From: Zootoca vivipara
Lineage: Eukaryota
Direction: 5' to 3'
Assembly: GCF_963506605.1 (NCBI RefSeq)
Contig: NC_083288.1
Location: 45,880,001-45,944,000 of the forward strand
DNA: 64,000 bases
A program made the translations under genes and the position numbers. The notes under the pieces were generated by a model. The model worked only from the letters and a program-made list of their open reading frames with translations. It searched no databases and was not told the origin of the DNA. Below are positions 11,535-63,803 of this stretch, one piece after another. Positions within the stretch are counted from its first letter, which is position 1. Each line of letters opens with the position of its first letter.

Positions 11535-12436
11535 TTAATAATGTCTCCTTATTAGTTTCTCCCTGCTATTCAGTTCTGGCCGCAACACAATGATGTAACA
11601 TTTCGGGCAAAAGATACAACCCATTAACCCAGCAGTGGAGGCCAAGATGGAGAAGATCTCCACAGCCACCATGCCTTTCCCTCTTGTGCTCAGATAAGTC
11701 GGAATAAAGGACAACCAAACACTGCAAAATGCCAACATGCTGAAGGTGATGAATTTTGCTTCATTAAAACTGTCAGGTAACTTGCGAGCAAGGAATGCCA
11801 CAATGAAGCTGGTGATGGCCAGAAGACCCATGTAGCCTAAGACACAGTAGAACATGATGACTGATCCTTCATTACACTGTAGAATGATTTCTTCATTCAC
11901 TGAATGCATGTCTAAATCAGGGAATGGGGAAGCGGTTGCCAGCCACACAGTACAAATAGCTATCTGAACAAGTGAACAACAAATTACAATTGAATAGGAC
12001 ACTTTCCTCCCCACCCATTTCTTCAGTCTTGATCCTGGCTTTGTAGCCATGAATGCTAGAGAAACTATGGTGGTTTTGGCCAGCACGCAAGAAACAGCCA
12101 CTGAGAAGATGATGCCAAAAGCTGCTTGTTGAAGGAGGCAGATCACTTTCCCAGGATGGCCAAGGAATAATAAAGAGGAGAGAAAACAGAGCAGGAGGGA
12201 GACAAGGAGAGTGTAGGAGAGGTCTCTGTTGTTGGCTTTGACTATTGGGGTATCTCTGTGCTTAATAAACAATCCTAGCACCAGGGCTGTGGTCAGTGAA
12301 AAAGAAACTGCAGCTGAGGCCAAAGTGACCCCTAGAGGTTCTGCATATGATAAAAAGGTTATAACTTTAGGGATGCAACCATTTTTATTTTTGTTTGCAT
12401 ACTGGTCTTCTGGGCATTTGAAACAGTCATCCATAT
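11535..12436 (-). CDS. Vmn2r: V2R-B exon 6 (7TM)
   Basis: ORF 11535-12434, 902 nt. Confidence 0.92.
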
Positions 12437-21451: not shown

Positions 21452-21744
21452 CGCCAACAGGATACCCTCCAGGAAATCCCCTTTCAATTCTTTGATTGAC
21501 GTCTTTCCTTGACCCTTGTTAACCTACGAGCGCGGGGATTCTGGTTGGCATCCTACCCCTTCGTCTGACAAATCACACTCCCCCTTTCTGTTGTTGCTAG
21601 AGACCGCTCCAGACCTCTCTCACTTCTCTGAGAATTTATCTCCTCTTCTCCAGCAGATGAGAAGGGCATGTGTTGGGGGAGCTGTCTTCAAATGGCTGGG
21701 AAGGAAGAAGAACTGCTCCTTCCTCCACTTCTAATTCTCTAACC

Positions 21745-22599: not shown

Positions 22600-25500
22600 T
22601 CAATTTAAGCATATCACCAGATGTATATTAAAATTTTCTTTTCTTAAATAATCTTCTACCTGTTTCCATTCCTTAATACATTTCTGTTTGGGGATGTTCC
22701 TAATTGCTGTGGTCATTTTATCTAGGTTCATGAATTCGACCAATTTCTCCTGCCACTCATATATTGTCGGCATTTTTTCACCCTTCCAGTTTTTAGCTAT
22801 CAATAGTCTGGCGGCTGCACTAGCATATGATAGTATATTTCTTTTTCCTTCAGGAATATTTTCTGGGATCATATACAATAAAAATATTTCTGGATTTTTG
22901 GGGAACGTCATTTTCAACATTTTTTTCAATTTTTCATATACTCCGTTCCAAAATTCTTGGATCTTGCCACATTGCCACCAGCAATGGTAATAGTTTCCAA
23001 TTTTCTCTTTACATTTCCAACATTTGTTGGAATCATTTTTGTATATTTTGGCAATTTTGGCCGGCGTAAGATGCCATCTGTAAACCATTTTAAGAATGTT
23101 CTCTTTAATTCCTGAGCACGCTGTAAATTTCATTCCTTCTTTCCAGAGTCTTTCCCATTTATTACTAAATATAGGTCTCCCTAAATCTTGGGCCCAACGT
23201 ATCATCGTGGTTTTTACCAATTCATCCTTTAATTCCCACTCGAGAAGGTAAGCATAAAATTTTGACATTGGCTTCTCGCCATTTTCCAGTAGTATCTCCT
23301 GGAATTTAGATTTATTTTCGGAAAAACCAATTTTCAGATGTTTAGTAAAAAGACTTTGGATCTGGCCATAATGAAGCCAGCTCATGCATTCTTGTTTAAG
23401 CTCATGATATGATTTCAATCTTAATTGTTCTCCCTCTCTTTCTAGGATATCCGAATACGTCGGCCATTTACTCTGCCTGAGTTTTCTGAATAATGCAGTT
23501 GCTTCCATAGGGGAGGCCCACCAAGGCGTTTTCTGCTCCAAGATATTTTTATATTCGTACCAAATTTTTAATAAAGATCCTTTGAACACATGGTTCTTAA
23601 ATTCTTTGTATCCGCCTTTTTTTTCTTCTAACAGATACTTGTGCCATCCCTGAGTGTTATTAAACCCTTCTATGTCTAATATCTCTTTATTCTCCAATTC
23701 TACCCATTCTTTTAGCCACACCAAGCCTGCTGACGCGTGATACAGTTTTAAGTCTGGGACCCCCCATCCTCCCCTCTCCCTTGTGTCAGTCAGCAATCTG
23801 TATTGTATCCTTGGCCTTTTTCTACCCCATATAAATTTGCTCAACCCCTTCCTCCATTTTTCGAATATTTCCTTTTTTTCCACAATTGGGAGCATTTGAA
23901 ATAAAAATGATAATTTAGGTAATATTACCATTTTGATCGCCGCTATCCTTGCAGAAAACGTCATTTGTAGGTTACCCCATCTTTCTAGCTCTCTCTCTAT
24001 TTCCTTCCATTTTTTGCCATAATTATTTTCGAATAGGTTTATATTTTTGGCTGTAATTTCGATTCCCAAATACTTCACTTTATTTACGATTTCCCATCCT
24101 GATTTTTCTCTCAATTCTTTTATCCCTTTTTCTCTTATATTTTTTGTAATAATTTTCGTTTTATTCATATTTATTTTAAAACCCGAAACTTTTCCATAAT
24201 CATTTAAGACTCTTTTCAAATGCCCTATTGTCTCTAGAGGATCCTCCAAAATTATAATGACGTCATCTGCAAAGGCTCGCGTTTTATACATGCTTCTTCC
24301 CACTTTAATTCCTTTGATCTTTTCACTTTCTTTTATTTCCTTCAATAAGCTTTCAATTGTTAGAATAAAAAGGAGGGGGGAGAGTGGACATCCCTGCCGG
24401 GTGCCCCTTGATATTTCAATTTCTTGGGAAAGCTCTCCATTTATTATCAAAATTCCTTTTTGTTTTTCATAAATTGAGTTTATACTTCTAAGAAAATTCC
24501 CTTCTATTCCTATTTCTTTAATTACTTCTTTCATATATTCCCAATTGACATTGTCGAATGCCTTCTCCGCGTCCAGGAATATCAAGGCGGCTTCCCGACC
24601 AGGGTTCCAGTCAAGGTATTCGATCAAATTAATCAGAATTCTGACATTATTATTCATCCTTCTTTTGGGGAGAAATCCTTGTTGTTCTTTTTCTATAATT
24701 CTATTTAGCACCTCCTTTAGTCTTTTTGCCATGATTGCTGCGAATATCTTGTAATCGACGTTTAATAGGGATATGGGCCTATAATTCTCGACTGAGTCTA
24801 TTTTGTCTCCCTTCGGTATGAGGGTTATAAAGGCCTCTTTCCAAGACTGGGGCATTTTCCCTTCTTCCATTATTTTATTAACTACTTTCACGTAAATCTC
24901 TCCTATTTCTTCCTTGAGGATTGTGTAGTGTCTACTCGAGAGCCCGTCCGTACCAGGGGACTTCCCTACTTTTAGATTTCCAATTATTTCATGTACCTCT
25001 TGCAAGGAAACAGGTTTGTTTAACCTTTCTTTCTCATCCTCACTTATCTTTTTTAACTTGTGTTTTCTAATATATTCTCTTATCATTTTCTCATTAATAT
25101 GGTCTCCTTTATACAAATTCCCATAATATTTCATGAAGCATTTATGAATATTTTCTCTCTTAACCCAATTTTTCCCATCCATTTTAATATTTGTGATTAT
25201 TCTTTCATTCTGTTTCTTTTTTAATTGCCAGGCCAATAATTTCCCCACTTTCCCTCCCATTTCAAAATTTCTTTGTTTGGCCCACTTAATTTTTTTCTCC
25301 ATTTCTTGTCCCGTTAATATTGATAACTCTGTTTGCAGGATTTTAATTTCAGATGCCACTTTGGCATCTTTGGGTTTTTTTACTAATTCTTTTTCTTTTT
25401 CCTCAAGTTCTTTTTGGATCTTATTTAAATTCTTTTCCCTTTGTCTTCTTATTTTACTCTTTTGTTGTATATATATCCCTCTAATAAAGGCTTTACTGGC

Positions 25501-26349
25501 GTCCCAGATTGTTTCCACCCCTTGTTCGCCTAATAGATTAATTTGAAAAAATTCTTTAACCAAATTCTTTATTTTGCCTACAAACTCATCATCACTTAAG
25601 ATGGTTTCGTCTAACCTCCATCTCCTTTTACTCCTATACTCTTCCTTTAAATTTAGCATTATTGGGTTATGGTCCGACAATGATTTCGTCATAATTTCAC
25701 ATTTGTCTAATTTAATCATTAACCTATTTGTGATCCAAATATTATCAATCCTTGCTGATGACCTTTGTACATTTGAATAAAATGTGTACTTTCTTTCCTC
25801 CGGATTTTCTAACCTCCAGCAATCTTGTAAATTATAGCTCTCTAATAATCTAAAGAAAATTTCCGGTAATTTGCCTTTATATTTCTTTCCTCCACTTGAC
25901 CTATCTAATTCCAGTTTTATTACTCCATTGAAATCTCCTGCTAGTATTACTTCTTCATCCTCAATACAATTTCCCATTAGCTTCCATAAATTTTTAAAGA
26001 ATTCAGTCTTTCCTCCATTTGGTACATACACATTTACCACCACAATTTCCCCTTCTGGTACATATAACTTAACCGCGATTGCTCTCCCCTCTTCGTCTTG
26101 AAAGAGTTTTTCTGCTCTAATCTTAGAGTCTACATATATAACTACTCCTCTCTTCTTTTTATTATTCAAGGAGACAAATTCATTTCCCAGTCTTTTGTTC
26201 GTCAACAATCTTTCATGTTTTTTTGATATATGTGTCTCCTGGAGACAAATTACCTTCCATTTACCTTTTTTCAAGATATGTTCAATTTTATTTCTTTTTA
26301 CTTTATTATTTAGGCCATTAATGTTCCAGGAGATTACCTTGAGGCTCAT
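22600..26349 (-). CDS. L1 ORF2p (APE endonuclease + reverse transcriptase + C-terminal domain)
   Basis: ISWNINGL, CLQETH, GDFN, SDHNP, NYRPISLLN, DAEKAFD, GTRQGCPLSPLLF, AFADD and CWKC...HCWWQC. Likely ATG at 26349. Confidence 0.95.
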   Translation of the reverse strand: MSLKVISWNINGLNNKVKRNKIEHILKKGKWKVICLQETHISKKHERLLTNKRLGNEFVSLNNKKKRGVVIYVDSKIRAEKLFQDEEGRAIAVKLYVPEGEIVVVNVYVPNGGKTEFFKNLWKLMGNCIEDEEVILAGDFNGVIKLELDRSSGGKKYKGKLPEIFFRLLESYNLQDCWRLENPEERKYTFYSNVQRSSARIDNIWITNRLMIKLDKCEIMTKSLSDHNPIMLNLKEEYRSKRRWRLDETILSDDEFVGKIKNLVKEFFQINLLGEQGVETIWDASKAFIRGIYIQQKSKIRRQREKNLNKIQKELEEKEKELVKKPKDAKVASEIKILQTELSILTGQEMEKKIKWAKQRNFEMGGKVGKLLAWQLKKKQNERIITNIKMDGKNWVKRENIHKCFMKYYGNLYKGDHINEKMIREYIRKHKLKKISEDEKERLNKPVSLQEVHEIIGNLKVGKSPGTDGLSSRHYTILKEEIGEIYVKVVNKIMEEGKMPQSWKEAFITLIPKGDKIDSVENYRPISLLNVDYKIFAAIMAKRLKEVLNRIIEKEQQGFLPKRRMNNNVRILINLIEYLDWNPGREAALIFLDAEKAFDNVNWEYMKEVIKEIGIEGNFLRSINSIYEKQKGILIINGELSQEIEISRGTRQGCPLSPLLFILTIESLLKEIKESEKIKGIKVGRSMYKTRAFADDVIIILEDPLETIGHLKRVLNDYGKVSGFKINMNKTKIITKNIREKGIKELREKSGWEIVNKVKYLGIEITAKNINLFENNYGKKWKEIERELERWGNLQMTFSARIAAIKMVILPKLSFLFQMLPIVEKKEIFEKWRKGLSKFIWGRKRPRIQYRLLTDTRERGGWGVPDLKLYHASAGLVWLKEWVELENKEILDIEGFNNTQGWHKYLLEEKKGGYKEFKNHVFKGSLLKIWYEYKNILEQKTPWWASPMEATALFRKLRQSKWPTYSDILEREGEQLRLKSYHELKQECMSWLHYGQIQSLFTKHLKIGFSENKSKFQEILLENGEKPMSKFYAYLLEWELKDELVKTTMIRWAQDLGRPIFSNKWERLWKEGMKFTACSGIKENILKMVYRWHLTPAKIAKIYKNDSNKCWKCKEKIGNYYHCWWQCGKIQEFWNGVYEKLKKMLKMTFPKNPEIFLLYMIPENIPEGKRNILSYASAAARLLIAKNWKGEKMPTIYEWQEKLVEFMNLDKMTTAIRNIPKQKCIKEWKQVEDYLRKENFNIHLVICLN

Positions 26350-26551
26350 TTCTTTATTAATATACTTTCTATCAACCACAGCAAAAATTTCAACTTTTAT
26401 TCAAAATTTTGATTCCCCGTTGAGACCCAAGAATTTTTACTATAAACAGGTGTGAGTAACTATGTGGTTATATAAGCAAAAAAGGTACTAAATCTAAAAT
26501 GAAAAAGGAAAGAAAAGGCAAAAGAAGATTATCTGCTAAGTCGCTATATTC

Positions 26552-29549: not shown

Positions 29550-30451
29550 TTAATTCTTTCTCTTCATTATCTGATCTCTGCTGTTCAGTTCAGGCCTCAG
29601 CACAATGATGTAGCACTTAGGGAAAAAGATACAACCCAGTAACCCAGCAGTGGAGGCCAAGATGGAGAAGATCTCCACAGCCACCATGCCTTTCCCTCTT
29701 GTGCTCAAGTAAGTCGGAATAAAGGACAACCAAACACTGCAAAACGGCAGCATGCTGAATGTAATGAACTTTGCTTCATTAAAACTGTCAGGTAGCTTGC
29801 GTGCAAGGAATGCCACAATGAAGCTGGTGATGGCCAGGAGACCCATGTAGCCCAGGACACAATAAAACATGGTGACGGACCCTTCATTACATTGTACAAT
29901 GATTTCTTCATTTACTGAATGCATGTCTAAATCAGGGAATGGGGGAAAGGTTGAGAGCCACATGGTGCAAAAACCCATTTGAACAAGTGAACAGCAAACA
30001 GCAATTGAATATGACACTTTCTTCCCCATCCATTTCTTCACTCTTGATCCTGGTTTTGTGGCCATGAATGCTAGAGAAACAATGGTGGTTTTGGCCAACA
30101 CACAAGAAACAGCCACTGAGAAGATGATGCTGAAAGCTGGTTGTCGGAGAAGGCAGGCCAGTTTCCCAGGTTGGCCAAGGAATAACAAAGAGGAGAGGAA
30201 GCAGAGCAAGAGGGAGACGAGGAGAATGTAGGTGAGATCCCGGTTGTTGGCTTTGACTATGGGGGTATCTTTATGTTTAACGAAAGAAGCAAACACCAAT
30301 ATTGTGATGAAAGAAAAAGAAGCTGCAGCTGAAACTAAACCTTTGCCTAAAGGTTCTTCATAAGACAGAAAATGTATAAGTTTGGGGTTGCATTGATTTC
30401 TATTCTTGCTTGGATACCGATCTTCTGGGCATTTGAAACAGTCTCCCATAT
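29550..30451 (-). CDS. Vmn2r: V2R-C exon 6 (7TM)
   Basis: ORF 29550-30449. Confidence 0.92.
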
Positions 30452-39414: not shown

Positions 39415-40316
39415 TTAATGTTTTCTTCTTATTAGCTGCTCCCTGCTGTTCAGCTCAGGTCTCAACACAATGATGTAGCATTTGGGGCAAAAGATGCAGC
39501 CCAGTAGCCCAGCACTGGAGGCCAAGATAGAGAAGACTTCCACGGCCACCATGTCTTTTCCTCTGGTGCTCAGGTAAGTAGGAACAAAAGAGGCCCAAAC
39601 ACTACAAAATGCTAACATGCTGAATGTAATGAACTTGGCTTCATTGAAGCTGTCAGGTAACTTGCGGGCTAAGAATGCTACAACGAAGCTGGTGATGGCC
39701 AAGAGGCCCATGTAGCCTAAAACACTGTAGAACATGGTGACTGACCCTTCGTTACATTGCACAATAATTTCTCCACTTACTGAATGAAAGTCCAAATCGG
39801 GGAAGGGAGCCGAGGTTGCCAGCCACATAGTACAAATGCTTGCTTGAATAAGGGAGCAGGTTAAAACAATGAAGATGGCCAGTCTTTTCCCCACCCACTT
39901 CCTCACGCTGGAGCCTGGTCTGGTGGCCATGAAAGCTGTAACCACAGTGATGGTTTTGGCCAGGATGCAAGAAACAGCCAATGAGAAAATTATGATGAAA
40001 ATTGGTTGTCGGAGAAAGCAGGTCACAATACAAGGTTGGCCAAGGAATAACAAAGAAGAGAGGAAGCAGAACAAGAGGCAGAGGAGAAGAGTGTAGGTGA
40101 GGTCCCGATTGTTTGCTTTGACTATGGGTGTGTCCTTGTGCTTAATAAATATCCCTAGCACCACAACTGTGATGATGGACAAAAAAACAGCAACTGAAGC
40201 TAAACTGATCCCCAGAGGTTCTTTATAAGAGAGAAAGTTTCTAATTTTTGAAGTGCAAGAATCTCTGTTTTTGTTTGAATATTGGTCTGCCGGGCACTGG
40301 AAACAGTCTTCTGTAT
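39415..40316 (-). CDS. Vmn2r: V2R-D exon 6 (7TM)
   Basis: 902 nt; starts (D)[12 protein letters not shown] and is in frame with ORF 39415-40182. Confidence 0.92.
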
Positions 40317-50809: not shown

Positions 50810-51151
50810 TTAATTATATCTCTTTGCTAGTTGCTCTCTGATGTTCAGCTTGGGCTTCAGCAGAATAATGTAGCATTTAGGGACAAAGATACAACCCAAT
50901 AACCCAGCACCAGAGGCTAGTATGGAGAAGATCTCTACAGCTACCATATATTTCCCCTTGGTGCTCAGGTAGGTAGGGACAAAGGACATCCAAACACTAG
51001 AAAACATCAACATGCTGAAGGTGATAAATTTGGCCTCGTTGAAAGTGTCCGGCAACTTCCTGGCCAGGAAAGCCACATTGAAGCTGATGATGGCCAGAAG
51101 GCCCATGTATCCCAGGACAAGATAAAACATGAGGACGGAACCTTCGTTGCA
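50810..51151 (-). CDS. Vmn2r: V2R-E exon 6, 3' half (TM5-7)
   Basis: [17 protein letters not shown]...[10 protein letters not shown]...AKRYN*. Confidence 0.9.
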
Positions 51152-54100
51152 TCCTATATAATAATGTCCATGTTGTCCCTGCGTCCAGATGTCCCGTGTG
51201 TCCCTGGGTCACTGCGCATGTGCCCCAGGGATACAGGGATTGGACAGCAGAGACTGCGCGCGCGCACTCTCCCCCCACTCTGCCTCCTCCAACCGCCGCT
51301 CCCGCCGGGGTGGAGGCCGGCGAAGGCCTCCTCACAACCCTCCCTGGCCGTGAGGAGCGGCGGTTGGAGGAGGCGGGGGGGGGAGAGTGCGCGCGTCCTT
51401 CCTGTCGGCGGCTGGGGGAGAGGAAGGAAGGAGGAGAAAGCGCCGCTTTCTCCTCCTCCGTTCCTGTCCCCCTGCCGCCGACAGCAAGGACGGGTCCCAG
51501 GGTTCGGAGAAGCGCTGCGCAAGCGCTTCTCCGAACCCTGGGATGTCTGCTTCCTGTCGGCGGCTGCGGGAGAGGAACGGAGAAGGAGAAAGCAGCGCTT
51601 TCTCCTCCTCCGTTCCTGTCCCCCTGCCGCCGACAGCAAGGACGGGTCCCAGGGTTCGGAGAAGCGCTGCGCAAGCGCTTCTCCGAACCCTGGGATGTCT
51701 GCTTCCTGTCGGCGGCTGCGGGAGAGGAACGGAGAAGGAGAAAGCAGCGCTTTCTCCTCCTCCGTTCCTGTCCCCCTGCCGCCGACAGCAAGGACGGGTC
51801 CCAGGGTTCGGAGAAGCGCTGCGCAAGCGCTTCTCCGAACCCTGGGATGTCTGCTTCCTGTCGGCGGCTGCGGGAGAGGAACGGAGAAGGAGAAAGCAGC
51901 GCTTTCTCCTCCTCCGTTCCTGTCCCCCTGCCGCCGACAGCAAGGACGGGTCCCAGGGTTCGGAGAAGCGCTGCGCAAGCGCTTCTCCGAACCCTGGGAT
52001 GTCTGCTTCCTGTCGGCGGCTGCGGGAGAGGAACGGAGAAGGAGAAAGCAGCGCTTTCTCCTCCTCCGTTCCTGTCCCCCTGCCGCCGACAGCAAGGACG
52101 GGTCCCAGGGTTCGGAGAAGCGCTGCGCAAGCGCTTCTCCGAACCCTGGGATGTCTGCTTCCTGTCGGCGGCTGCGGGAGAGGAACGGAGAAGGAGAAAG
52201 CAGCGCTTTCTCCTCCTCCGTTCCTGTCCCCCTGCCGCCGACAGCAAGGACGGGTCCCAGGGTTCGGAGAAGCGCTGCGCAAGCGCTTCTCCGAACCCTG
52301 GGATATCTGCTTCCTGTCGGCGGCTGCGGGAGAGGAACGGAGAAGGAAAAAGCAGCGCTTTCTCCTCCTCCGTTCCTGTCCCCCTGCCGCCGACAGCAAG
52401 GACGGGTCCCAGGGTTCGGAGAAGCGCTGCGCAAGCGCTTCTCCGAACCCTGGGATGTCTGCTTCCTGTCGGCGGCTGCGGGAGAGGAACGGAGAAGGAG
52501 AAAGCAGCGCTTTCTCCTCCTCCGTTCCTGTCCCCCTGCCGCCGACAGCAAGGACGGGTCCCAGGGTTCGGAGAAGCGCTGCGCAAGCGCTTCTCCGAAC
52601 CCTGGGATGTCTGCTTCCTGTCGGCGGCTGCGGGAGAGGAACGGAGAAGGAGAAAGCAGCGCTTTCTCCTCCTCCGTTCCTGTCCCCCTGCCGCCGACAG
52701 CAAGGACGGGTCCCAGGGTTCGGAGAAGCGCTGCGCAAGCGCTTCTCCGAACCCTGGGATGTCTGCTTCCTGTCGGCGGCTGCGGGAGAGGAACGGAGAA
52801 GGAGAAAGCAGCGCTTTCTCCTCCTCCGTTCCTGTCCCCCTGCCGCCGACAGCAAGGACGGGTCCCAGGGTTCGGAGAAGCGCTGCGCAAGCGCTTCTCC
52901 GAACCCTGGGATGTCTGCTTCCTGTCGGCGGCTGCGGGAGAGGAACGGAGAAGGAGAAAGCAGCGCTTTCTCCTCCTCCGTTCCTGTCCCCCTGCCGCCG
53001 ACAGCAAGGACGGGTCCCAGGGTTCGGAGAAGCGCTGCGCAAGCGCTTCTCCGAACCCTGGGATGTCTGCTTCCTGTCGGCGGCTGCGGGAGAGGAACGG
53101 AGAAGGAGAAAGCAGCGCTTTCTCCTCCTCCGTTCCTGTCCCCCTGCCGCCGACAGCAAGGACGGGTCCCAGGGTTCGGAGAAGCGCTGCGCAAGCGCTT
53201 CTCCGAACCCTGGGATATCTGCTTCCTGTCGGCGGCTGCGGGAGAGGAACGGAGAAGGAAAAAGCAGCGCTTTCTCCTCCTCCGTTCCTGTCCCCCTGCC
53301 GCCGACAGCAAGGACGGGTCCCAGGGTTCGGAGAAGCGCTGCGCAAGCGCTTCTCCGAACCCTGGGATGTCTGCTTCCTGTCGGCGGCTGCGGGAGAGGA
53401 ACGGAGAAGGAGAAAGCAGCGCTTTCTCCTCCTCCGTTCCTGTCCCCCTGCCGCCGACAGCAAGGACGGGTCCCAGGGTTCGGAGAAGCGCTGCGCAAGC
53501 GCTTCTCCGAACCCTGGGATGTCTGCTTCCTGTCGGCGGCTGCGGGAGAGGAACGGAGAAGGAGAAAGCAGCGCTTTCTCCTCCTCCGTTCCTGTCCCCC
53601 TGCCGCCGACAGCAAGGACGGGTCCCAGGGTTCGGAGAAGCGCTGCGCAAGCGCTTCTCCGAACCCTGGGATGTCTGCTTCCTGTCGGCGGCTGCGGGAG
53701 AGGAACGGAGAAGGAGAAAGCAGCGCTTTCTCCTCCTCCGTTCCTGTCCCCCTGCCGCCGACAGCAAGGACGGGTCCCAGGGTTCGGAGAAGCGCTGCGC
53801 AAGCGCTTCTCCGAACCCTGGGATGTCTGCTTCCTGTCGGCGGCTGCGGGAGAGGAACGGAGAAGGAGAAAGCAGCGCTTTCTCCTCCTCCGTTCCTGTC
53901 CCCCTGCCGCCGACAGCAAGGACGGGTCCCAGGGTTCGGAGAAGCGCTGCGCAAGCGCTTCTCCGAACCCTGGGATATCTGCTTCCTGTCGGCGGCTGCG
54001 GGAGAGGAACGGAGAAGGAAAAAGCAGCGCTTTCTCCTCCTCCGTTCCTGTCCCCCTGCCGCCGACAGCAAGGACAGGTCCCAGGGTTCGGAGAAGCGCT

Positions 54101-54165
54101 GCGCAAGCGCTTCTCCGAACCCCAGGATTCTAGCGCCCGTTATTGAACGGGCTGAAAACCACTAG
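51152..54165 (+). mobile_element. Non-autonomous Helitron (3014 bp)
   Basis: 5' TCCTATATAATAA, 3' CTAG, subterminal hairpin GCCCGTT-attg-AACGGGC (54135-54152), inserted between host A (51151) and T (54166) with no TSD. Confidence 0.93.
51399..54127. repeat. ~18 x 152-bp GC-rich tandem array, each unit containing two hairpins
   Basis: ggatgtctgc recurs every 152 bp (51541, 51693, ...). Hairpin 1 has 40-bp arms (36/40 matched); hairpin 2 has perfect 22-bp arms. Confidence 0.97.
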
Positions 54166-54725
54166 TTCAACTATAATCTCTGTAGCCTGGGAGTGCATGT
54201 CCAAATCTGGGAATGGGGGAGAGATTGCCAGCCAAACCACACAAATGCCTGCTTGAAAAAGAGAGCCTGAAAGCACAATGGAGTTGGCCAGTCTTTTGCC
54301 CACCCACTTCCTCATGCTAGATCCTGGTTTGGTGGCCATAAAAGCAATCACAACAGTGATGGTTTTAGCCAACACACAAGAAACAGCCATAGAGAAGATG
54401 ATGCCAAAAGTAGTTTGACGGAGAATGCAGGTCACCTTCGTAGGTCTTCCAAGAAACAGCAAAGAACAGAGGAAGCAGAGGAGGAGGGAGACAAGGAGAA
54501 TGTAGCTGATGTCCCGATTGTTGGCTTTGACGATGGGGGTATCTCTGTGCTTGATGAAAAGTCTTAGCACGAAAGTGGTGATGAGTGAAAGAGAAACAGA
54601 AACCGAACTAAGGCTGATCCCCAAAGATTCTTCAAAAGAAATGAATGTCATAAGCTTGGAGATGCATCTATCTCTACTCTGTTTAGGATATTGATCATCT
54701 GGGCATTTAAAGCATTCATCCATGT
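54166..54725 (-). CDS. Vmn2r: V2R-E exon 6, 5' half (CRD end, TM1-4)
   Basis: MDECFKCPDDQY...DLDMHSQATEIIVE, then reads into the Helitron and stops at 54130. Confidence 0.9.
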
Positions 54726-55446: not shown

Positions 55447-56100
55447 AGTGGTTGGTTATTCTTTAGCCAATGAATCAGAGCTGTGATTGGCAAGTGACTT
55501 GAAAAAGAAACAACACCTAAGCAACAGAAGTCCATGTTGGCCTCTCCAAAAACAATACTACTGTATTCCATCCCCTTTGGTGCACTTTTTCAGTTTCTGT
55601 CTCATTTTCTAGAGCTTGGAATCTCAGTAGTTTGCCCTTCTCTTCTTCCTAGGAACAAGGATGCATATTTCCTTTGGTGAATTTCTCTGAACTCAGGTTA
55701 CTCAGTATAAATCTTTTCTTTTCTTTTTTCAAATACAGCTATACAATAGCTACTGTGTATATTAAGAAATCCTCTGCCCTCACACAGCAAAAGCAACATT
55801 AGAAAAAGAAGAAATGCTTAGCCTGTCTCCTAGGATGCAGGAGCTAAAGTCTAGGCCCTACTTAAGAATTCATTGTATAGTATACTTACACAAATCTTAT
55901 GCAACTTGCAGATCCATGAGCTCTTTTATGAATGAGCCATGGCCAAATATACCTCCAGTCCCCTGAACCCATAACATCTTGTTGGCATCCCTGTCTGCGC
56001 CTGCCAAAAAATGGCTGGGAGAGGACAAAAGTCAACCCACCACTGAACATATTCTCAATCCCCAAGTGTTCCCTGTGGGTTGCATTCTGTCTCCCATCAG

Positions 56101-57095
56101 CTACTGCTGCTCTGCCAGGGAGTGTTTGGGAGGACTGCTCCCCCTGAAGCCCACTTCCACCTGGGGCTTGGGGCGGGTCCCCCACTCCACCACAGCTTTT
56201 AAGACTCCTGGGAGGCCTGGAACATCAGTGCTGCTGTGAGTACTGGAAGGACTGCTCCCCCTGAAGCCCACTTCCACCTTGGGCTTGGGGCGGGTCCCCC
56301 ACTCCACCACAGCTTTTAAGGCTCCTGGGAGGCCTGGAACATTGCTGCTGCTGCTGCTCTGCCAGGGAGTGTTTGGGAGGACTGCTCCCCCTGAAGCCCA
56401 CTTCCACCTGGGGCTTGGGGCGGGTCCCCCACTCCACCACAGCTTTTAAGGCTCCTGGGAGGCCTGGAACATCAGTGCTGCTGTGAGTACTTGAAGGACT
56501 GCTCCCCCTGAAGCCCACTTCCACCTTGGGCTTGGGGCGGGTCCCCCACTCCACCACAGCTTTTAAGGCTCCTGGGAGGCCTGGAACATTGCTGCTGCTG
56601 CTGCTCTGCCAGGGAGTGTTTGGGAGGACTGCTCCCCCTGAAGCCCACTTCCACCTGGGGCTTGGGGCGGGTCCCCCACTCCACCACAGCTTTTAAGGCT
56701 CCTGGGAGGCCTGGAACATCAGTGCTGCTGTGAGTACTTGAAGGACTGCTCCCCCTGAAGCCCACTTCCACCTGGGGCTTGGGGCGGGTCCCCCACTCCA
56801 CCACAGCTTTTAAGGCTCCTGGGAGGCCTGGAACATTGCTGCTGCTGCTGCTCTGCCAGGGAGTGTTTGGGAGGACTGCTCCCCCTGAAGCCCACTTCCA
56901 CCTGGGGCTTGGGGCGGGTCCCCCCACTCCACCACAGCTTTTAAGGCTCCTGGGAGGCCTGGAACATCACTGCTGCTGTGAGTACTGGAAGGACTGCTCC
57001 CCCTGAAGCCCACTTCCACCTTGGGCCCGGGGGCGGGACCCATACTCTACCATAGCTTTAAGGCTCCTAGGAGGCCTGAAACAGTGCCGCTGCTG
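56101..57095. repeat. 4 x 247-bp higher-order repeat (117+130-bp subunits) upstream of the L2 ORF
   Basis: gccaggg at 56114, 56361, 56608 and 56855; shared ~95-bp core aggactgctccccctgaagccc...ggcctggaacat occurs 8 times. Confidence 0.93.
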
Positions 57096-57571
57096 CTTTT
57101 CTTGTAATTCTGATGTGTTTGTAACTTTTATTGTTTTTGGTTTTTGTTTATCGTTTAGTCTGTTAGTTTGTTTTCTGTATTGGTTTTAAATTCGATTTTA
57201 AGGGGAGGGGTTAATTTTAGTTTGTAATTTTCTGTCTTTGTTTGTATTGTTTTATTGCATTAGTTTGTTTTCTGTATTGGTTTTAAATTTGATTTTAAGG
57301 GGAGGGGTCAATTTTAGTTTGTAATTTTCTGTCTTTGTATTGTTTTACTGTATTTTTTGATTTACATAGGTTTTAGGGAGGGATTTTTAGTCGGGTGTGG
57401 GAATCTGTTAAATTTTAGTGTATTTGTAATTTTTATTGTTTTTGGTTTTATTGTTTTATTGTGTTTTTTGTGTTTTTCTTTTGTTCTGTTCTTTGCTGTT
57501 TTTACAGAGGTTTTATTTTGTTTTTAAGGGGAGGGGTCAGGGCTGCCCGGGAGGGGGTCCCAGCAAGCAAA

Positions 57572-60500
57572 ATGGCTGGGGCAGATTCCACAGGGGGTGA
57601 TGCACTGGGACAACCGATCTCAGTGGTCACGGGTAGGAGGAGGAGTTACGCTAAGACCAGACCATGTCATTACCGAGGAGGCAGACTTAGTCGTTGTCTG
57701 AGGACTATCCCTGCCTCCGGGTCTGGTCCTGACCGGACGGATATTGGAATCAGCAAGGGATACCCACATGACCTGAAGGTGCTGCTGTGCAATGCCAGGT
57801 CGATGATGAATAAGACCACTGCCATTCACGACCTGATTGTGGATGGAGGATTTGACCTGGCATGTGTGACAGAGACCTGGTTGGATGAAGCCGATGGGCC
57901 CGTTCTTGGCGCTGCTTGTCCACCAGGTTTCTCTTATGCACAGCAACCCAGGCCATCTGGGCGGGGAGGGGGGGTTGCAGTGATTTTTAGGAAGTCATTA
58001 GTTTGTACCAGGCGTCCTATTGGTAAGACGGAGTTTTCTGAGTGCATGTTCTGGAAGTTGGGCAATAGGGGCAGTACAGGATTCCTTTTGGTGTACCGAC
58101 CTCCCCGCTGCACCAAGGATTCCCTGCCCGAGCTGCTTCAGGTCGTGTCGGATGTGCTCCTGGAGACACCTAGCTTGGTTGTCTTAGGGGATTTTAACAT
58201 CCATGCCGACACGACCTTACAAGGAGCCGCTCGGGACTTTGTGGAAAGCATGGCCACCATGGGGCTGTCCCTGAATAAGTCTGGCCCAACTCATAGCCGC
58301 GGACATGCCTTGGACTTGGTGTTCACCTCTATGGATGTTGGTGATCTGACATTAAGTAAAAGCGAAACAAAAGAAGTGCCATGGTCAGATCACTTTCTGG
58401 TGCAACTGGACTTCTCCGCAACCCTTCCCCTCTGCAGGGAGGTGGGACCGATTCGGATGGTCCGCCCCCGCTACTTAATGGATCCAATTGGCTTCCAGAG
58501 AGTGGTAGGGGATGTTTTATCCCATGTCGATGGCCTTTCAGCTGATTCCCTGGTGGCCCGCTGGAATGCGGAGTTAACCAGCGCTATTGACTGTCTGGCT
58601 CCGAAGCGCCCTCTCAGATTGCATGGAGCCCGGACAGCCCCGTGGTTTTCCCCGGCGCTGAGGGTGATGAAACAGTCGTTGAGACGGCTAGAGCGCCGGT
58701 GGCGGAAAACTCATTTTGAATCAGACCGGACACGGGCTAGAGCTCAAATTCGAGCCTACCAAGTGGCAATGGCGACGGCGAAGAGGACCTTCTTCACCGT
58801 CTCCATCGCATCTGCAGAAAACAGCAGCAGGAGACTCTTCCAGGTGGTTCGCAATTTAGCGGAACCACCTGCTCCATCCGGGCCCAGTACGGGCCACATG
58901 ATCTCCTGCAATGATTTTGCAAAGTTTTTTGCAGATAAAGTCGCTCAGATTCGGGAAGAGGTAGACTCCACCGTGGGGGCAGGGCCGGGGCAGGGGAGTG
59001 CTAGAGTCCTGTCTAGTCAAGTTTTGTGGGATCAATTTCAATCTGTTACCTCCGAGGATGTGGACAGGCTGCTTCGACGAGTGAAACCAACCACCTGTCT
59101 CCTTGATCCTTGCCCATCCTGGCTTATAAAAGCTAGCCAGGAAGGGCTGGGCGATGGGCTTCGCGGGTTGGTAAATGCTTCTCTCCATGAAGGAGCCTTC
59201 CCAGACCCGCTGAAAGAGGCGGTTATTAAACCGCTTCTTAAAAAACCATCTTTAGATCCGGCCAATATGGCCAACTATCGCCCAGTCTCAAATCTTCCAT
59301 TCTTGGGCAAGGTGGTTGAGCGAGTGGTTGCTGAACAACTTCAGGCACGCCTGGAAGAAGCGGACCATTTGGATCCCTTCCAGTCAGGATTCAGGCCTCA
59401 TCATGGGACTGAAACTGCCTTGGTCGCACTGGTCGATGATCTCCGGCGGGCTAGGGACAAAGGTAAGAGCTGTTTCCTTGTTCTGCTGGATCTCTCAGCG
59501 GCTTTTGACACCATCGACCATAACATCCTTCTGGATCGTCTAGAGGGTTTGGGAGCTGGGGGCACTGTCATGCAGTGGTTCCGCTCCTTCCTCCTGGGCC
59601 GTGTTCAGAAAGTGGTGGTGGGGGATGAGTGTTCAGACCCCTGGGCTCTCACTTGTGGGGTGCCTCAGGGTTCTGTCCTCTCCCCCATGCTTTTTAACAT
59701 CTATATGCAGCCGCTGGGAGAGATCATCAGGGGGTTTGGGCTGGGTGTCCATCAGTATGCTGATGATACCCAGCTCTACCTCTCTTTTAAATCAGAACCA
59801 GTGAAGGCAGTGAAGGTCCTGTGTGAGTGCTTGGAGGCGGTTGGAGGATGGATGGCGGCTAACAGATTGAGATTGAATCCTGACAAGACAGAAGTACTGT
59901 TTGTGGGGGACAGGAGGCGGGCAGGTGTGGAGGACTCCCTGGTCCTGAATGGGGTAACTGTGCCCCTGAAAGACCAGGTGCGCAGCCTGGGAGTCATCTT
60001 AGACTCACAGCTGTCCATGGAGGCACAGGTCAACTCTGTGTCCAAGACAGCTGTTTATCAGCTCCATCTGGTACGCAGGCTGAGTCCCTACCTGCCCGCT
60101 GACTGTCTCTCCAGAGTGGTGCATGCTCTAGTTATCTCTCGCTTGGACTACTGCAATGCGCTCTACGTGGGGCTACCTTTGAAGGTGACCCGGAAACTAC
60201 AACTAATCCAGAATGCGGAAGCTAGACTGGTGACTGGGAGCGGCCGCCGAGACCACATAACACCGGTCCTGAAAGACCTACATTGGCTCCCAGTACGTTT
60301 CCGAGCACAATTCAAAGTGTTGGTGTTGACCTTTAAAGCCCTAAACGGCCTCGGTCCGGTATACCTGAAGGAGCGTCTCCACCCCCATCGTTCTGCCCGG
60401 ACACTGAGGTCCAGCTCCGAGGGCCTTCTGGCGGTTCCCTCACTACGAGAAGCCAAGTTACAGAGAACCAGGCAGAGGGCCTTCTCGGTAGTGGCACCCA

Positions 60501-60604
60501 CCCTGTGGAATGCCCTCCCACTAGAGGTCAAAGAGAACAACAATTACCAGACCTTTAGAAGGCATCTCAAGGCAGCCCTGTTTAGGGAAGCTTTTAATGT
60601 TTGA
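57572..60604 (+). CDS. L2 ORF2 (APE endonuclease + RT), intact
   Basis: LCNARS, CVTETWL, GDFNIH, SDHFLV, NYRPVSNLPFLGK, LLDLSAAFDTIDH, GVPQGSVLSP and QYADDTQLY. First ATG at 57572. Confidence 0.93.
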   Translation: MAGADSTGGDALGQPISVVTGRRRSYAKTRPCHYRGGRLSRCLRTIPASGSGPDRTDIGISKGYPHDLKVLLCNARSMMNKTTAIHDLIVDGGFDLACVTETWLDEADGPVLGAACPPGFSYAQQPRPSGRGGGVAVIFRKSLVCTRRPIGKTEFSECMFWKLGNRGSTGFLLVYRPPRCTKDSLPELLQVVSDVLLETPSLVVLGDFNIHADTTLQGAARDFVESMATMGLSLNKSGPTHSRGHALDLVFTSMDVGDLTLSKSETKEVPWSDHFLVQLDFSATLPLCREVGPIRMVRPRYLMDPIGFQRVVGDVLSHVDGLSADSLVARWNAELTSAIDCLAPKRPLRLHGARTAPWFSPALRVMKQSLRRLERRWRKTHFESDRTRARAQIRAYQVAMATAKRTFFTVSIASAENSSRRLFQVVRNLAEPPAPSGPSTGHMISCNDFAKFFADKVAQIREEVDSTVGAGPGQGSARVLSSQVLWDQFQSVTSEDVDRLLRRVKPTTCLLDPCPSWLIKASQEGLGDGLRGLVNASLHEGAFPDPLKEAVIKPLLKKPSLDPANMANYRPVSNLPFLGKVVERVVAEQLQARLEEADHLDPFQSGFRPHHGTETALVALVDDLRRARDKGKSCFLVLLDLSAAFDTIDHNILLDRLEGLGAGGTVMQWFRSFLLGRVQKVVVGDECSDPWALTCGVPQGSVLSPMLFNIYMQPLGEIIRGFGLGVHQYADDTQLYLSFKSEPVKAVKVLCECLEAVGGWMAANRLRLNPDKTEVLFVGDRRRAGVEDSLVLNGVTVPLKDQVRSLGVILDSQLSMEAQVNSVSKTAVYQLHLVRRLSPYLPADCLSRVVHALVISRLDYCNALYVGLPLKVTRKLQLIQNAEARLVTGSGRRDHITPVLKDLHWLPVRFRAQFKVLVLTFKALNGLGPVYLKERLHPHRSARTLRSSSEGLLAVPSLREAKLQRTRQRAFSVVAPTLWNALPLEVKENNNYQTFRRHLKAALFREAFNV

Positions 60605-61930: not shown

Positions 61931-62659
61931 TGGAATATAAATGCAATTTTTAAAAATTGTTAAGGCTTGTATGAAATCAGAATGCTCCCTCCCCCAACAC
62001 CTCCCCAAATTAGAAGACACTAGATTCTCTTTCTGCATAGCATCTAGTCAGCATAGGAAAGATCAGCATTATTTCTCAGTAGCTTTAGTTGCTTCAGGAG
62101 GGGTGATCTCAGAAGGTGATGCTGGGAGACTGCTTTTCCACACAATCAATGTTGTGAAAACATAATAATGGCCTATATCCCAGTATCACATTGGCCAACA
62201 CAGTACCTTTGAGAAGTTCACAATCAAGCCTTGAATGCAAAGACGTTCTCCCCATTAATGATTCCCAGTGCCTGGTATTCAGAGGCATACTGAAATGGAC
62301 AGGTGAGGAACCATCAAGTGTCTGTCATCTACCTGACAATTCTAGGGGAAATCATCAGTATTGTGATTTAAACCAATTTCAGAACTCATCATCTGATTAC
62401 AAGGTGTTTGAAATTGGTGCTAGTTCAGGAAAGGATAAGAGTGAATAAGCTGAATCTTTTCTGAATCAAGAACTGTCCGAGAACTTCCATCACCCACAAT
62501 ATCTGAGGACCCAAGTTTGAAGAACATCATTATCAGGTAGCTTGGGCAGCAAATGACAATGATCATAACAATTAAATCATTTTACATGGGTGTGAGTGAT
62601 AGGTGCTCTTTCACTTTCTACTTTACCAGAATAAAACCATTTCATTTGGGAGACATTAC

Positions 62660-63523
62660 CTGCCAAGGTTGAACACTGTGAAGGTCAAGACTTTCAAACG
62701 CCATCACTGCTCTGTACTTGACCCAAGAGGAGTAAGTGGCATGCAAAGCATGTGCTATAGCATAGACGGCATTATAGACACTGTAACTGTGGCCAGTCAT
62801 GCCCATTTCAAACACAGACCTGGGAAGGCTTTCCGGTTTCTCATCTCCAGTACATGTTGCATTCAGTATCTCCGACAACACGGAATTTGAAAAAGAACAT
62901 TCAAACGCCTGCTCCCAGAAAACTTTGAAAAATCCATCTTCATCTGCAGAGTTGGGTTTTTTGTTCTGGATATATGTTTGGAACCCATTAGGTTCATTTG
63001 AGTGAATTGCGAAAGATATGGCTCCATGGAATAGTTGAAAATTCCATGTCCTTATCATGGATGTTACAGAAAAATCTATCTGAGCTGTCATAATCCATAC
63101 TTTCCCAACAGAAGTGACTTCATTATATTCATGGAAGAATATAGCTACTATGGTGGTCAACCACATGATGGTCATAGTTTCACCATAAGTGACAAAAGCT
63201 GTGGCTTTGCTCTCCATGAAAGGGATGTTAATACTCCACCCCATATCAATCAATTCATCAAAAGAAAGGAAATTGCCTTGGTTTGGGATTCTTTGTATGA
63301 AAGCTGGACAGATTCTATTCTGGGAAAGCAGGGGCTCTAAAGCCTGCAAAAAATGGTCTCCACTGTCATCATCCACAGCAAAGAGCCCAATCCATGTCCA
63401 TCCAAAATGCTGAAGCAAATGGATAATGCCCATATACTGCTGGGATTCACTGGGCACCATGCGGTAAAAGGAAGAGGCATGTTTTGTATGACCCTCTTTC
63501 AGGGCAAAGGATCCATACGCAAG
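62660..63523 (-). CDS. Vmn2r: V2R-E exon 3
   Basis: 864 nt, open, LAYGSF...VQPWQ. Confidence 0.9.
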
Positions 63524-63803
63524 CTGAAAGACCAAAATAAAAATAAAGATTGCTTGTATAGAGCTTGGATATTAAGAAAACCTGAGTGCATTCTTATGTG
63601 ATTGCCTTTTATACCGCATATGTGGAGGTAAAATTCTTCTTTTAATTTCTACCTTTGCTTAAACACAACAGTGTTATCTTCAATGGTTCATTGGGATATT
63701 GCATTTGGAAGAAACGTGGTAACATAATTTAATCTATACACAGTCTCATGATAAAGGGTGTGTGTGTGTGCTAGACTCCCCTTACTCTGTCCCCTCTTTT
63801 TTA

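What the first reader, a model, noticed from the sequence alone, without database searches (positions are those of the whole stretch)
51399..54127. Helitron cargo is a 152-bp double-hairpin satellite: a mobile satellite seed and possible dsRNA source
Seen: ~90% of the element is ~18 near-identical, CpG-rich 152-bp units. Each unit has a 40-bp imperfect inverted repeat (ctgtcggcggc...gagaaagc / gctttctc...gccgccgacag, 3-nt loop) followed by a perfect 22-bp one (tcccagggttcggagaagcgct-gcgca-agcgcttctccgaaccctggga), giving ~36 stems in series. There is almost no CpG decay. Established: Drosophila DINE-type Helitron relatives carry ~150-bp central tandem repeats that seeded satellite DNA. Inference: this may be a reptilian counterpart. 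A near-nucleosome-length, fully fold-back monomer travelling inside an ssDNA-intermediate transposon could stabilise the single strand, extrude cruciforms, or yield Dicer-type hairpin RNA if transcribed from the V2R promoter. I do not know of a description of this family.
Basis: partly seen in the sequence, partly recalled or inferred. Interest (0 to 1): 0.85.

Follow-up and report, generated by a model that had tools for sequence, protein, structure and literature searches.

The report
Young Helitron carrying hairpin minisatellite
A recently inserted, non-coding rolling-circle transposon (Helitron), nine-tenths of it made of eighteen 152-bp units that each fold into two hairpins, has split the last exon of a lizard vomeronasal receptor gene; it is a fresh example of the known habit of Helitrons to carry and spread tandem repeats, not a new kind of element.

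Summary
Window 51398-54127 is a 152-bp x 17.9 tandem array that is 99% identical. Each unit folds into a 40-bp imperfect hairpin and a 22-bp perfect hairpin. CpG o/e is 0.87, against 0.38 for the window.

The array fills 90.6% of a 3,014-bp non-autonomous canonical Helitron (51152-54165). The element starts with TC, ends with CTAG, has an 18-nt 3' palindrome, and sits between A and T with no target duplication or terminal inverted repeats. Removing it restores an intact V2R 7TM exon, so the insertion is young.

The window is very likely Zootoca vivipara. The element's ends match the terminal motifs published for Heli1Xen1, a horizontally transferred Helitron family reported in Zootoca and other lacertids.

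The monomer is not confined to this locus:
- The scan noted three more 152-bp-array Helitrons on other chromosomes of this genome.
- Read contigs show that the ends and the monomer are highly repeated.
- A second species holds the same 5' part, its junction with the array, and the tandem joint.

This copy's interior units are a minority monomer type arranged in 5-6-unit blocks, so its large size comes from lineage-specific expansion.

Youth alone explains the CpG retention. There is no evidence for free satellite arrays or for small RNAs. RNA reads are sparse and come from other copies.

Verdict: a new member of a known kind.

The parts
51152..54165 (+). Whole non-autonomous canonical Helitron, 3,014 bp. 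GC 65%, 273 CpGs, CpG o/e 0.86.
   Evidence: Joining A51151 to T54166 aligns without gaps to three V2R paralogues in the window and restores one open 7tm_3 reading frame. There are no TIRs and no TSD. The internal ORFs have no protein homologues.
51152..51174 (+). 5' terminus (LTS): starts with TC, followed by a TA-rich TATATAA stretch. Unpaired in the fold.
   Evidence: Sequence and fold. In organism B a contig ends its match exactly at 51151/51152 against a different flank (record 9). The motif fits the Heli1Xen1 LTS given in PMC12001565.
51175..51254 (+). 5' hairpin A (about 80 nt). It includes the most widely shared core of the family (51211-51244).
   Evidence: Fold of 51152-51397: -95.7 kcal/mol, z = -13.1. 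This part has the highest DNA and RNA depth, and loose ends cluster at 51211 and 51244/5.
51259..51395 (+). 5' hairpin B: a long imperfect palindrome (about 137 nt) specific to the array-bearing subfamily.
   Evidence: Self reverse-complement match of 76% and fold. Depth is about 4-6 times lower than at the terminal 93 bp. An organism B contig bridges from here into unit 1 (record 13).
51398..54127 (+). Tandem array of 152 bp x 17.9 units. The edge units (1 and 18) are divergent and the interior is homogenised. A variant junction (G148A + G39A) recurs at units 6/7, 12/13 and 17/18.
51554..51636 (+). Hairpin 1 of a representative unit (unit 2): 40-position stem with 36 Watson-Crick pairs and a 3-nt loop.
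51647..51695 (+). Hairpin 2 of the same unit: perfect 22-bp stem and a 5-nt loop.
54135..54152 (+). 3' subterminal palindrome of 18 nt (7-bp stem, 4-nt loop): the Helitron terminator hairpin.
   Evidence: Fold. It is the only match in the window to the pattern CCCGTT..AACGGG..CTAG. It fits the Heli1Xen1 RTS motif in PMC12001565.
54162..54165 (+). 3' end CTAG (CTRR). It lies 9 nt after the palindrome and is followed by the host T at 54166.
54166..54723 (-). Proximal part of the interrupted V2R last exon (7tm_3 profile positions 2-156). In the present state the frame runs 11 codons into the Helitron and stops at 54130.
   Evidence: ORF 54130-54723(-); Pfam 7tm_3, E = 1.1e-45.
50810..51151 (-). 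Distal part of the same V2R exon (7tm_3 profile positions 165-251, ending at the normal stop codon).
   Evidence: ORF 50810-51130(-); Pfam 7tm_3, E = 3.1e-32; the joined frame is intact.

Best explanation
This is a young copy of a non-autonomous canonical Helitron. It most likely belongs to the horizontally transferred Heli1Xen1 group already reported in Zootoca and other lacertids.

A RepHel protein encoded elsewhere mobilised it. That protein needs only the TC-...TA-rich 5' end and the hairpin-plus-CTAG 3' end. The element landed between an A and a T in the last coding exon of a V2R gene and truncated the receptor after about TM4.

Its interior is passenger DNA: a CpG-rich minisatellite of 152-bp units, each made of two palindromes. 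The minisatellite travels with the element. That is how it reaches hundreds to thousands of sites and more than one species.

Within individual copies it changes length by unequal exchange or replication slippage. In this lineage one minority unit type was homogenised and a block of 5-6 units was duplicated twice, taking the array from about 6-7 to 18 units.

The high CpG content and the perfect palindromes persist because the copy is too young to have decayed.

Shown here: the anatomy, the boundaries, the empty site, the repetitiveness, presence in a second species, and the block structure. Inferred: trans-mobilisation, the mode of array growth, and passenger status.
For: Helitron anatomy and exact boundaries.

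Youth:
- The joined flanks give an uninterrupted 7tm_3 exon.
- Units 2-17 are identical apart from two recurrent variants.

Non-coding nature:
- No protein homologue of the array ORFs among 5.8 billion or 1.84 billion proteins.
- No Rfam family reaches its threshold.

Family spread:
- Organism A summed contig depth is about 210 in the flank, 89,000-152,000 at the 5' end, 24,000-50,000 in hairpin B, and 86,000-366,000 in the monomer.
- Organism B has zero depth in the flank. It holds the 5' end against a different flank, a contig bridging hairpin B into unit 1, and a 'goes back 152' joint.
- Three further first-stage notes report 152-bp-array Helitrons on other chromosomes.

Local expansion:
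- The variant junction recurs every 6 and then every 5 units.
- At 51415, 51428 and 51431 fewer than 10% of genome-wide depth carries the state of the interior units. At 51426 the figure is 8.8%. At 51492, 73% carry the state of edge unit 18.

Family identity:
- The window's own V2R protein lies on a 54,850,491-bp contig, the same length as the contig carrying the NCBI Zootoca vivipara V2Rs.
- PMC12001565 describes Heli1Xen1 in Zootoca, Lacerta and Darevskia with TC...CTAG ends, a TATATAAA-type LTS and a CCCGTTA...TAACGGG RTS hairpin. It reports hundreds to more than 20,000 non-autonomous copies.

Precedent for Helitron-borne arrays: PMC12628747, PMC9957191 and PMC12001565.
Against: - Array-length variation among copies therefore rests on unchecked first-stage notes.
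- Summed Logan contig depth is not a copy number.
- Membership of Heli1Xen1 rests on two short published motifs. I had no reference sequence to align.
- Almost the whole element, including the non-repeated 5' part, is fold-back. Pure passenger DNA would not be expected to look like that, so a role for the hairpins is left open.
- The count of 18 copies at this locus could not be checked against long reads.
Confidence: 0.8

Rival explanations
1. The hairpins are useful to the element. In the single-stranded stage of rolling-circle transposition a strand that is about 86% self-paired would be compact and resistant to nucleases. It could also offer 3' fold-backs or structured sites for second-strand synthesis. 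That would give this subfamily a transposition advantage.
For: - The non-repeated 5' part also folds into two long hairpins.
- Only about 23 nt at the 5' end and about 13 nt at the 3' end are unpaired.
- The subfamily is abundant and shared with a second species.
- Two genome-wide variants, 51499 A>G and 51539 T>C, have nearly equal depth and are the two sides of one base pair of hairpin 2.
Against: - The terminal 93 bp is 3-6 times deeper than hairpin B, and a first-stage note reports the same ends with other cargo (s1-849373). Family members without this cargo therefore seem at least as successful.
- Helraiser experiments show that only the LTS and the RTS hairpin matter (PMC4778049).
- The paired variants were not shown to lie on the same molecules. 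They are also both CpG transitions.
Confidence: 0.12
2. The array is a source of hairpin or double-stranded RNA that is processed into small RNAs (siRNA, piRNA or miRNA-like). These would either silence the family or act on host genes.
For: - Stem lengths of 40 bp (imperfect) and 22 bp (perfect) are in the range of Dicer substrates.
- Generic sub-threshold matches to many miRNA-precursor models occur on both strands.
- The RNA run has monomer reads with the first mate on either strand (depth about 6-26 from 6% of the run), and 4 reads cross a unit-to-unit joint.
- DINE-TR1 arrays give piRNAs in Drosophila (Dias et al. 2015, as cited in PMC9957191).
Against: - No small-RNA data were available.
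- The V2R flank of this locus had zero RNA depth.
- 89% of the RNA laid runs on into unlike sequence, and most reads are only 90-95% alike. This is the pattern of read-through of other, older copies inside host transcripts.
- No Rfam family reaches its gathering score.
- Both mate orientations are expected anyway from copies inserted in both orientations.
Confidence: 0.2
3. The monomer is, or is becoming, a classical satellite: long free arrays outside Helitron ends, seeded by such elements.
For: - The monomer has the highest summed depth of the stretch, up to 366,000.
- The route from Helitron or Helentron cargo to satDNA is documented in Drosophila and oysters (PMC9957191, PMC12628747).
- This copy shows that block duplication can triple an array.
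Against: - The depth ratio of monomer to hairpin B is about 12. That equals what in-element arrays of 6-18 units would give, so no extra free arrays are needed.
- All four loci noted by the scan lie inside Helitrons.
- No published lacertid satellite matched the unit's strings.
Confidence: 0.12
4. The number of units at this locus is an assembly artefact: a shorter array that was over-expanded.
For: The units are near-identical, which is the hardest case for assemblers. The short-read contigs laid here cannot span the array.
Against: - The array has an ordered internal pattern: a paired variant at units 6/7, 12/13 and 17/18, and distinct edge units. Random over-expansion would not produce this.
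- The tandem joints themselves are confirmed in independent runs.
Confidence: 0.08

Closest known systems
Heli1Xen1 (Heli1Xen1-a), a horizontally transferred canonical Helitron family of Xenopus, Lacertidae (Zootoca, Lacerta, Darevskia), Cordylidae, Bufo and Polypteridae (PMC12001565)
   Same: - TC start and CTAG end.
- TA-rich TATATAA at the 5' end.
- A CCCGTTA-type hairpin before the 3' end.
- Host (Zootoca).
- Many short non-autonomous copies.
- Very recent activity in Zootoca.
   Different: The paper says nothing about lizard cargo. In X. laevis only 4 of 43 Helitron-derived tandem arrays came from Heli1Xen1. Here the cargo is an 18-unit palindromic minisatellite. Identity to the reference sequence could not be measured.
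DINE-TR1 / DINE-1 (Helentron-associated elements) of Drosophila, with ~150-bp central tandem repeats (PMC9957191; PMC4067079)
   Same: - A non-autonomous rolling-circle element with conserved ends around a central array of ~150-bp units.
- Array length varies.
- Arrays can expand.
- High copy number.
   Different: DINE-1 elements are Helentrons, with subterminal inverted repeats, insertion at TT and T-runs at the ends. This element has none of these and is a canonical Helitron. There is no sequence relation. The units here are double palindromes and CpG-rich.
Heli2Xen of Xenopus, with 166-bp minisatellite arrays (PMC12001565)
   Same: A vertebrate Helitron-like element carrying a minisatellite of similar unit length in most non-autonomous copies.
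   Different: It belongs to the Helitron2 lineage, has arrays at both ends of the element, and has 2-7 repeats. No palindromic units are reported.
Oyster Cg170/HindIII and other satDNAs inside Helitron/Helentron elements (PMC8268682; PMC12628747)
   Same: The same monomers are found inside mobile elements at many dispersed sites, with arrays of different lengths.
   Different: In oysters the same repeats also exist as stand-alone and one-sided 'intermediate' arrays. That has not been shown here.
Tandem arrays of truncated Helitrons made by aberrant rolling-circle replication in plants (Xiong et al. 2016, as summarised in PMC12628747)
   Same: Tandem repetition associated with a canonical Helitron.
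   Different: In plants the repeated unit is the Helitron itself, with many 5' ends and one 3' end. Here the unit lacks Helitron ends, and one 5' end and one 3' end bracket the array.

Membership tests
Canonical Helitron (Helitron1), criteria as listed in PMC4067079 | 5' end TC | tested here: met
   The element starts with TC at 51152. The boundary was fixed by gap-free alignment of the joined flanks to three paralogues.
Canonical Helitron (Helitron1) | 3' end CTRR | tested here: met
   CTAG at 54162-54165.
Canonical Helitron (Helitron1) | A 16-20-nt palindrome about 11 bp from the 3' end | tested here: met
   An 18-nt palindrome at 54135-54152, ending 13 nt before the element's end.
Canonical Helitron (Helitron1) | Insertion between A and T, with no target-site duplication | tested here: met
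   A51151 | element | T54166. The reconstructed empty site matches the paralogues and keeps the reading frame. There is no flanking direct repeat.
Canonical Helitron (Helitron1) | No terminal inverted repeats | tested here: met
   The best local match of the first 80 nt to the reverse complement of the last 80 nt is 6 nt, which is below the shuffle mean.
Canonical Helitron (Helitron1) | RepHel transposase (autonomous copies only) | tested here: not met
   There is no coding capacity. The only ORFs are read-throughs of the array with no homologues. The element is therefore non-autonomous, which does not exclude membership.
Heli1Xen1 (PMC12001565) | LTS with TC followed by a TA-rich TATATAAA-type motif | tested here: met
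   The 5' end reads TCC-TATATAA-TAATG, which matches 7 of the 8 letters of the published motif.
Heli1Xen1 (PMC12001565) | RTS hairpin CCCGTTA...TAACGGG followed by CTAG | tested here: met
   CCCGTTA-TT-GAACGGG followed by CTAG. One stem letter differs from the published motif.
Heli1Xen1 (PMC12001565) | At least 80% identity over at least 80% of the family query (the paper's own rule) | not testable with these tools
   No reference sequence was available.
Helentron-associated elements (DINE-1 / HINE) | Subterminal inverted repeats and insertion at a TT dinucleotide with T-runs at the ends | tested here: not met
   There are no inverted terminal or subterminal match, the target is A|T, and the ends are TC and CTAG.
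Classical satellite DNA | Long stand-alone arrays not bounded by transposon ends | tested here: inconclusive
   Only in-element arrays have been seen: this locus and three first-stage notes. The depth ratio of monomer to hairpin B is about 12, which fits in-element arrays. The whole genome was not searchable.
Any Rfam RNA family (miRNA precursors and others) | Score at or above the family's gathering threshold | tested here: not met
   The best hits were MIR1858 at 74.8 bits (threshold 137) and mir-627 at 53.4 bits (threshold 86). Hits occur on both strands and to many unrelated models, so they reflect generic hairpin shape only.

The most novel reading that the evidence does not exclude
A horizontally transferred canonical Helitron has picked up a self-folding, CpG-island-like minisatellite, and the fold-back design is adaptive. 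On this reading:
- The hairpins protect the single-stranded transposition intermediate or help to prime its second strand.
- The arms of the hairpins are kept perfect by mismatch correction within the fold-back. The paired A-T/G-C variant at 51499/51539 hints at this.
- Each new insertion drops a roughly 1-3-kb portable CpG island and a potential source of hairpin RNA into lacertid genes, and possibly across species.
Probability: 0.08. Interest if true: 0.65.

Novelty: new member of a known kind. Interest (0 to 1): 0.33.

Why it matters
This locus gives a clean, datable vertebrate example of a transposon-borne minisatellite caught in three states at once. It is mobile (many loci and a second species), it is expanding inside one copy (blocks of 5-6 units), and it is doing damage (a V2R receptor gene cut in an otherwise intact exon).

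It links a published, very recently invading Helitron family of lacertids to a cargo that has not been described. Each insertion adds up to about 270 CpGs.

The element could serve in several ways:
- as an insertion-polymorphism marker in Zootoca;
- as a natural test of whether long perfect palindromes are tolerated in amniote genomes;
- as a practical warning for annotators, because the array is open in all six reading frames.

It does not open a new class of element or mechanism.

Tried and rejected
1. Coding reading of the array. All six frames are open (ORFs of 919-1,024 aa). A palindrome-aware null gives P = 0.2 for a stop-free unit. Neither protein search found any homologue. Rejected.

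2. Known RNA family. Only sub-threshold, both-strand, many-family hairpin hits, and no tRNA-like part. Rejected.

3. The unit derived from the element's own 5' palindrome or from its ends. The best local alignments score 12-18, which is noise. Rejected.

4. The unit as a mini-Helitron. It has no CTRR end and no CCCGTTA hairpin. The match with the 152-bp modal length of X. laevis non-autonomous Heli1Xen1 is taken as coincidence.

5. Other copies in the window. None were found.

6. Copies in viral or metagenome collections. There were 0 exact hits for the core of hairpin 2, which is uninformative for a lizard repeat.

8. Literature strings from the unit and the ends. 0 papers. No lacertid satellite or Helitron paper other than PMC12001565 bears on this element.

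9. Selection for pairing in hairpin 1. Unit 1 and the consensus both have 36 of 40 pairs. Two of their differences close mismatches and two open new ones. No signal.

10. The search of earlier findings by sequence returned nothing.
Full report
**What is there.** Tandem Repeats Finder reports one array at 51398-54122 with period 152, 17.9 copies, 99% matches and no indels. Cutting the array into units shows that units 2-17 are identical except for two recurrent changes: G148A in units 6, 12 and 17, and G39A in units 7, 13 and 18. Unit 1 differs from the consensus at 6 positions and unit 18 at 8. A unit folded as single-stranded DNA gives -74.5 kcal/mol, against -28.8 for shuffles (z = -15.9). 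It forms exactly the two hairpins described. Hairpin 1 has 36 of 40 Watson-Crick pairs and a 3-nt loop. Hairpin 2 has 22 of 22 pairs and a 5-nt loop. 86% of bases are paired. The array has GC 65% and CpG o/e 0.87, against GC 42% and CpG o/e 0.38 for the window.

**The element around it.** BLAST of the flanks against the window showed that 51101-51152 and 54191-54260 match adjacent parts of three V2R paralogues. Joining A51151 directly to T54166 gives a sequence that aligns to those paralogues without a gap. On the minus strand it reads as one uninterrupted exon ending at a normal stop. The two halves match Pfam 7tm_3 positions 2-156 and 165-251.

The insert is therefore 51152-54165, 3,014 bp. 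It begins with TC and ends with CTAG. It has an 18-nt palindrome ending 13 nt before its 3' end. It lies between A and T with no target duplication, and it has no terminal inverted repeats. These are the defining features of canonical Helitrons as listed in PMC4067079. They exclude the Helentron/DINE-1 design, which has subterminal inverted repeats and a TT target.

The 246-bp 5' part is itself two hairpins. Apart from about 23 nt at the 5' end and 13 nt at the 3' end, the whole element is fold-back. It has no coding capacity. The 919-1,024-aa ORFs in all six frames are read-throughs of a stop-free unit. A palindrome-aware null makes this unremarkable (P = 0.2), and the ORFs have no homologue in either protein library. 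Rfam gives only sub-threshold hairpin look-alikes on both strands.

**Effect on the host gene.** The Helitron lies antisense in the last exon of a minus-strand V2R gene. An ANF_receptor exon lies upstream at 62642-63535. As it stands, the frame runs 11 codons into the Helitron and stops (ORF 54130-54723), so TM5-7 are lost. The rest of the exon is undamaged, so the insertion is recent.

**Whose genome, which family.** The window is therefore very likely Zootoca vivipara (Lacertidae).

PMC12001565 describes Heli1Xen1, a horizontally transferred canonical Helitron family found in Xenopus and in Zootoca, Lacerta and Darevskia among others. Its features are TC...CTAG ends, a TA-rich TATATAAA motif in the left end and a CCCGTTA...TAACGGG hairpin in the right end. 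The paper reports hundreds to more than 20,000 non-autonomous copies per genome and an invasion of Zootoca estimated at about 0.6 My. The ends here read TCC-TATATAA-TAATG and CCCGTTA-TT-GAACGGG followed by CTAG, and they fit those motifs. I could not align to the reference, because the supplement is not held. I rate family membership as probable (about 0.65), not shown. That paper does not mention lizard cargo. In X. laevis it found tandem arrays mostly in the unrelated Heli2Xen (166-bp minisatellite) and only four in Heli1Xen1.

**Is the monomer a family feature or a local accident?** It is both.

(a) Three other first-stage notes in this genome, on other chromosomes, describe Helitrons filled with 152-bp two-hairpin units. 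They span 887, 1,065 and 1,740 letters, roughly 6, 7 and 10-11 units. A fourth note reports the same ends with other cargo. These notes are unchecked. With this locus that makes 4 array-bearing copies in 213 windows (about 13.6 Mb), or a few hundred copies per 1.42-Gb genome as a crude lower figure.

(b) I laid public runs on 50900-51560. In organism A (the window's species) the summed contig depth is about 210 in the V2R flank, 89,000-152,000 over the terminal 93 bp, 24,000-50,000 over hairpin B and 86,000-366,000 over the monomer. Summed depth is not a copy number, but the contrast is two to three orders of magnitude. The ratio of monomer to hairpin B is about 12. That is what in-element arrays of 6-18 units would give, so free satellite arrays are not needed.

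(c) Organism B has no depth on the flank. It does have a contig that matches from exactly 51151/51152 inward behind a different flank, a contig with no mismatch over 51192-51308, one that bridges hairpin B into unit 1, and a 'goes back 152' joint. The same subfamily, with its tandem cargo, therefore exists in a second species. Organism C laid nothing.

(d) The same table shows that this array is atypical. At 51415, 51428 and 51431 fewer than 10% of genome-wide depth carries the state of interior units 2-17. At 51426 only 8.8% does. At 51492, 73% (100% in organism B) carries the A of edge unit 18 rather than the G of units 1-17. Edge units keep majority states, while the interior is a homogenised minority type. 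In addition, the paired variant (148A of one unit with 39A of the next) recurs at unit junctions 6/7, 12/13 and 17/18. The simplest reading is two duplications of a 5-6-unit block, which took a founder of about 6-7 units to 18. Whether this happened at this site or in the source copy cannot be told.

**CpG.** At the substitution rate and invasion age given in PMC12001565, only about 1-2% of CpGs would be expected to have decayed (my inference). Genome-wide, all listed CpG transitions in the monomer except 51492 are at or below 8% of depth. Youth suffices, and no protection from methylation needs to be invoked. Methylation was not measured.

**RNA.** In one RNA-seq run of organism A (6% of the run read), the V2R flank has zero depth. 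The 5' terminal part has about 50-120 reads deep per mate orientation, and the monomer about 6-26. Four reads cross a unit-to-unit joint. 89% of what was laid runs on into unlike sequence, and most reads are only 90-95% alike. This is what read-through of many older copies inside host transcripts looks like. It shows that monomer RNA of both polarities exists. It shows neither expression of this locus nor processing into small RNAs.

**Comparison with what is known.** Central tandem arrays in rolling-circle elements are well documented:
- DINE-TR1, with ~150-bp repeats that twice became satDNA (PMC9957191).
- Oyster Cg170/HindIII and other satDNAs inside Helitron/Helentron elements, and a general review (PMC12628747).
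- Heli2Xen in frogs.

Most of these are Helentron or Helitron2 elements. This one is a canonical Helitron, in an amniote, with units made of two palindromes and CpG-island composition. I found no description of this cargo. It is a new member of a known kind. It is wrong as to family, and the claims about dsRNA, the V2R promoter and a 'satellite seed' remain untested or unsupported.

**Mechanism.** Experiments with Helraiser show that transposition needs the left end and uses the right-end hairpin as a terminator, and that it passes through circular intermediates (PMC4778049). Anything between the ends is carried along. I therefore take the array as passenger DNA that hitch-hikes. It grows or shrinks by unequal exchange or slippage, which tandem and palindromic DNA favours. 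I give this reading a probability of 0.8. That the near-total fold-back design helps the single-stranded intermediate is possible (0.12) but untested.

**Limits.**
- Read laying and the look-up of sequencing runs allow one call each, so the right junction, an empty allele and the array length were not examined.

Noticed in passing
window 51499 and 51539 (hairpin 2 of unit 1; the same positions in every unit): In organism A contigs, A>G at 51499 (depth 13,155; 43 contigs) and T>C at 51539 (depth 14,530; 34 contigs) are the two sides of one base pair of the perfect hairpin. This points to a monomer subtype with G-C instead of A-T at that pair. Both changes are CpG transitions. It could reflect decay on both arms or arm-to-arm correction. 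Whether they occur on the same molecules was not shown.
   Followed up: partly
window 56100-57097 (also 57163-57343): A second GC-rich tandem array of 247 bp x 4 (97% identical, with 117/130-bp sub-periods) lies about 360 bp upstream of a LINE ORF2-like ORF at 57461-60604(+) that has Exo_endo_phos and RVT_1 domains. It may be LINE 5'-UTR monomers. It sits in the intron of the interrupted V2R gene.
   Followed up: partly
window 51154-54165, both strands: The array is free of stop codons in all six frames and gives mechanical ORFs of 919-1,024 aa. This is a trap for ab initio gene callers. It is not significant against a palindrome-aware null (P = 0.2), and no homologues exist.
   Followed up: yes
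window 2629-3528, 11535-12434, 29550-30449, 39415-40182 (all minus strand): The window is a tandem cluster of V2R genes, all on the minus strand. It contains intact 299-aa 7tm_3 last exons and ANF_receptor exons, interleaved with LINE reverse-transcriptase ORFs (19859-21487, 22600-26379, 70-1188). The gene hit by the Helitron is one of at least five paralogues.
   Followed up: partly
window 51152-54165 compared with PMC12001565: The paper gives 152 bp as the most frequent length of non-autonomous Heli1Xen1 copies in X. laevis. That is the same number as the unit length here. The unit has no Helitron ends, so I treat this as coincidence.
   Followed up: no
window 51245-51400, RNA run X21: Over hairpin B the RNA reads have their first mate almost only on the + strand (2.9-23, against 0-2.3 on the other). 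The terminal part and the monomer show both orientations. The numbers are too small to interpret.
   Followed up: no
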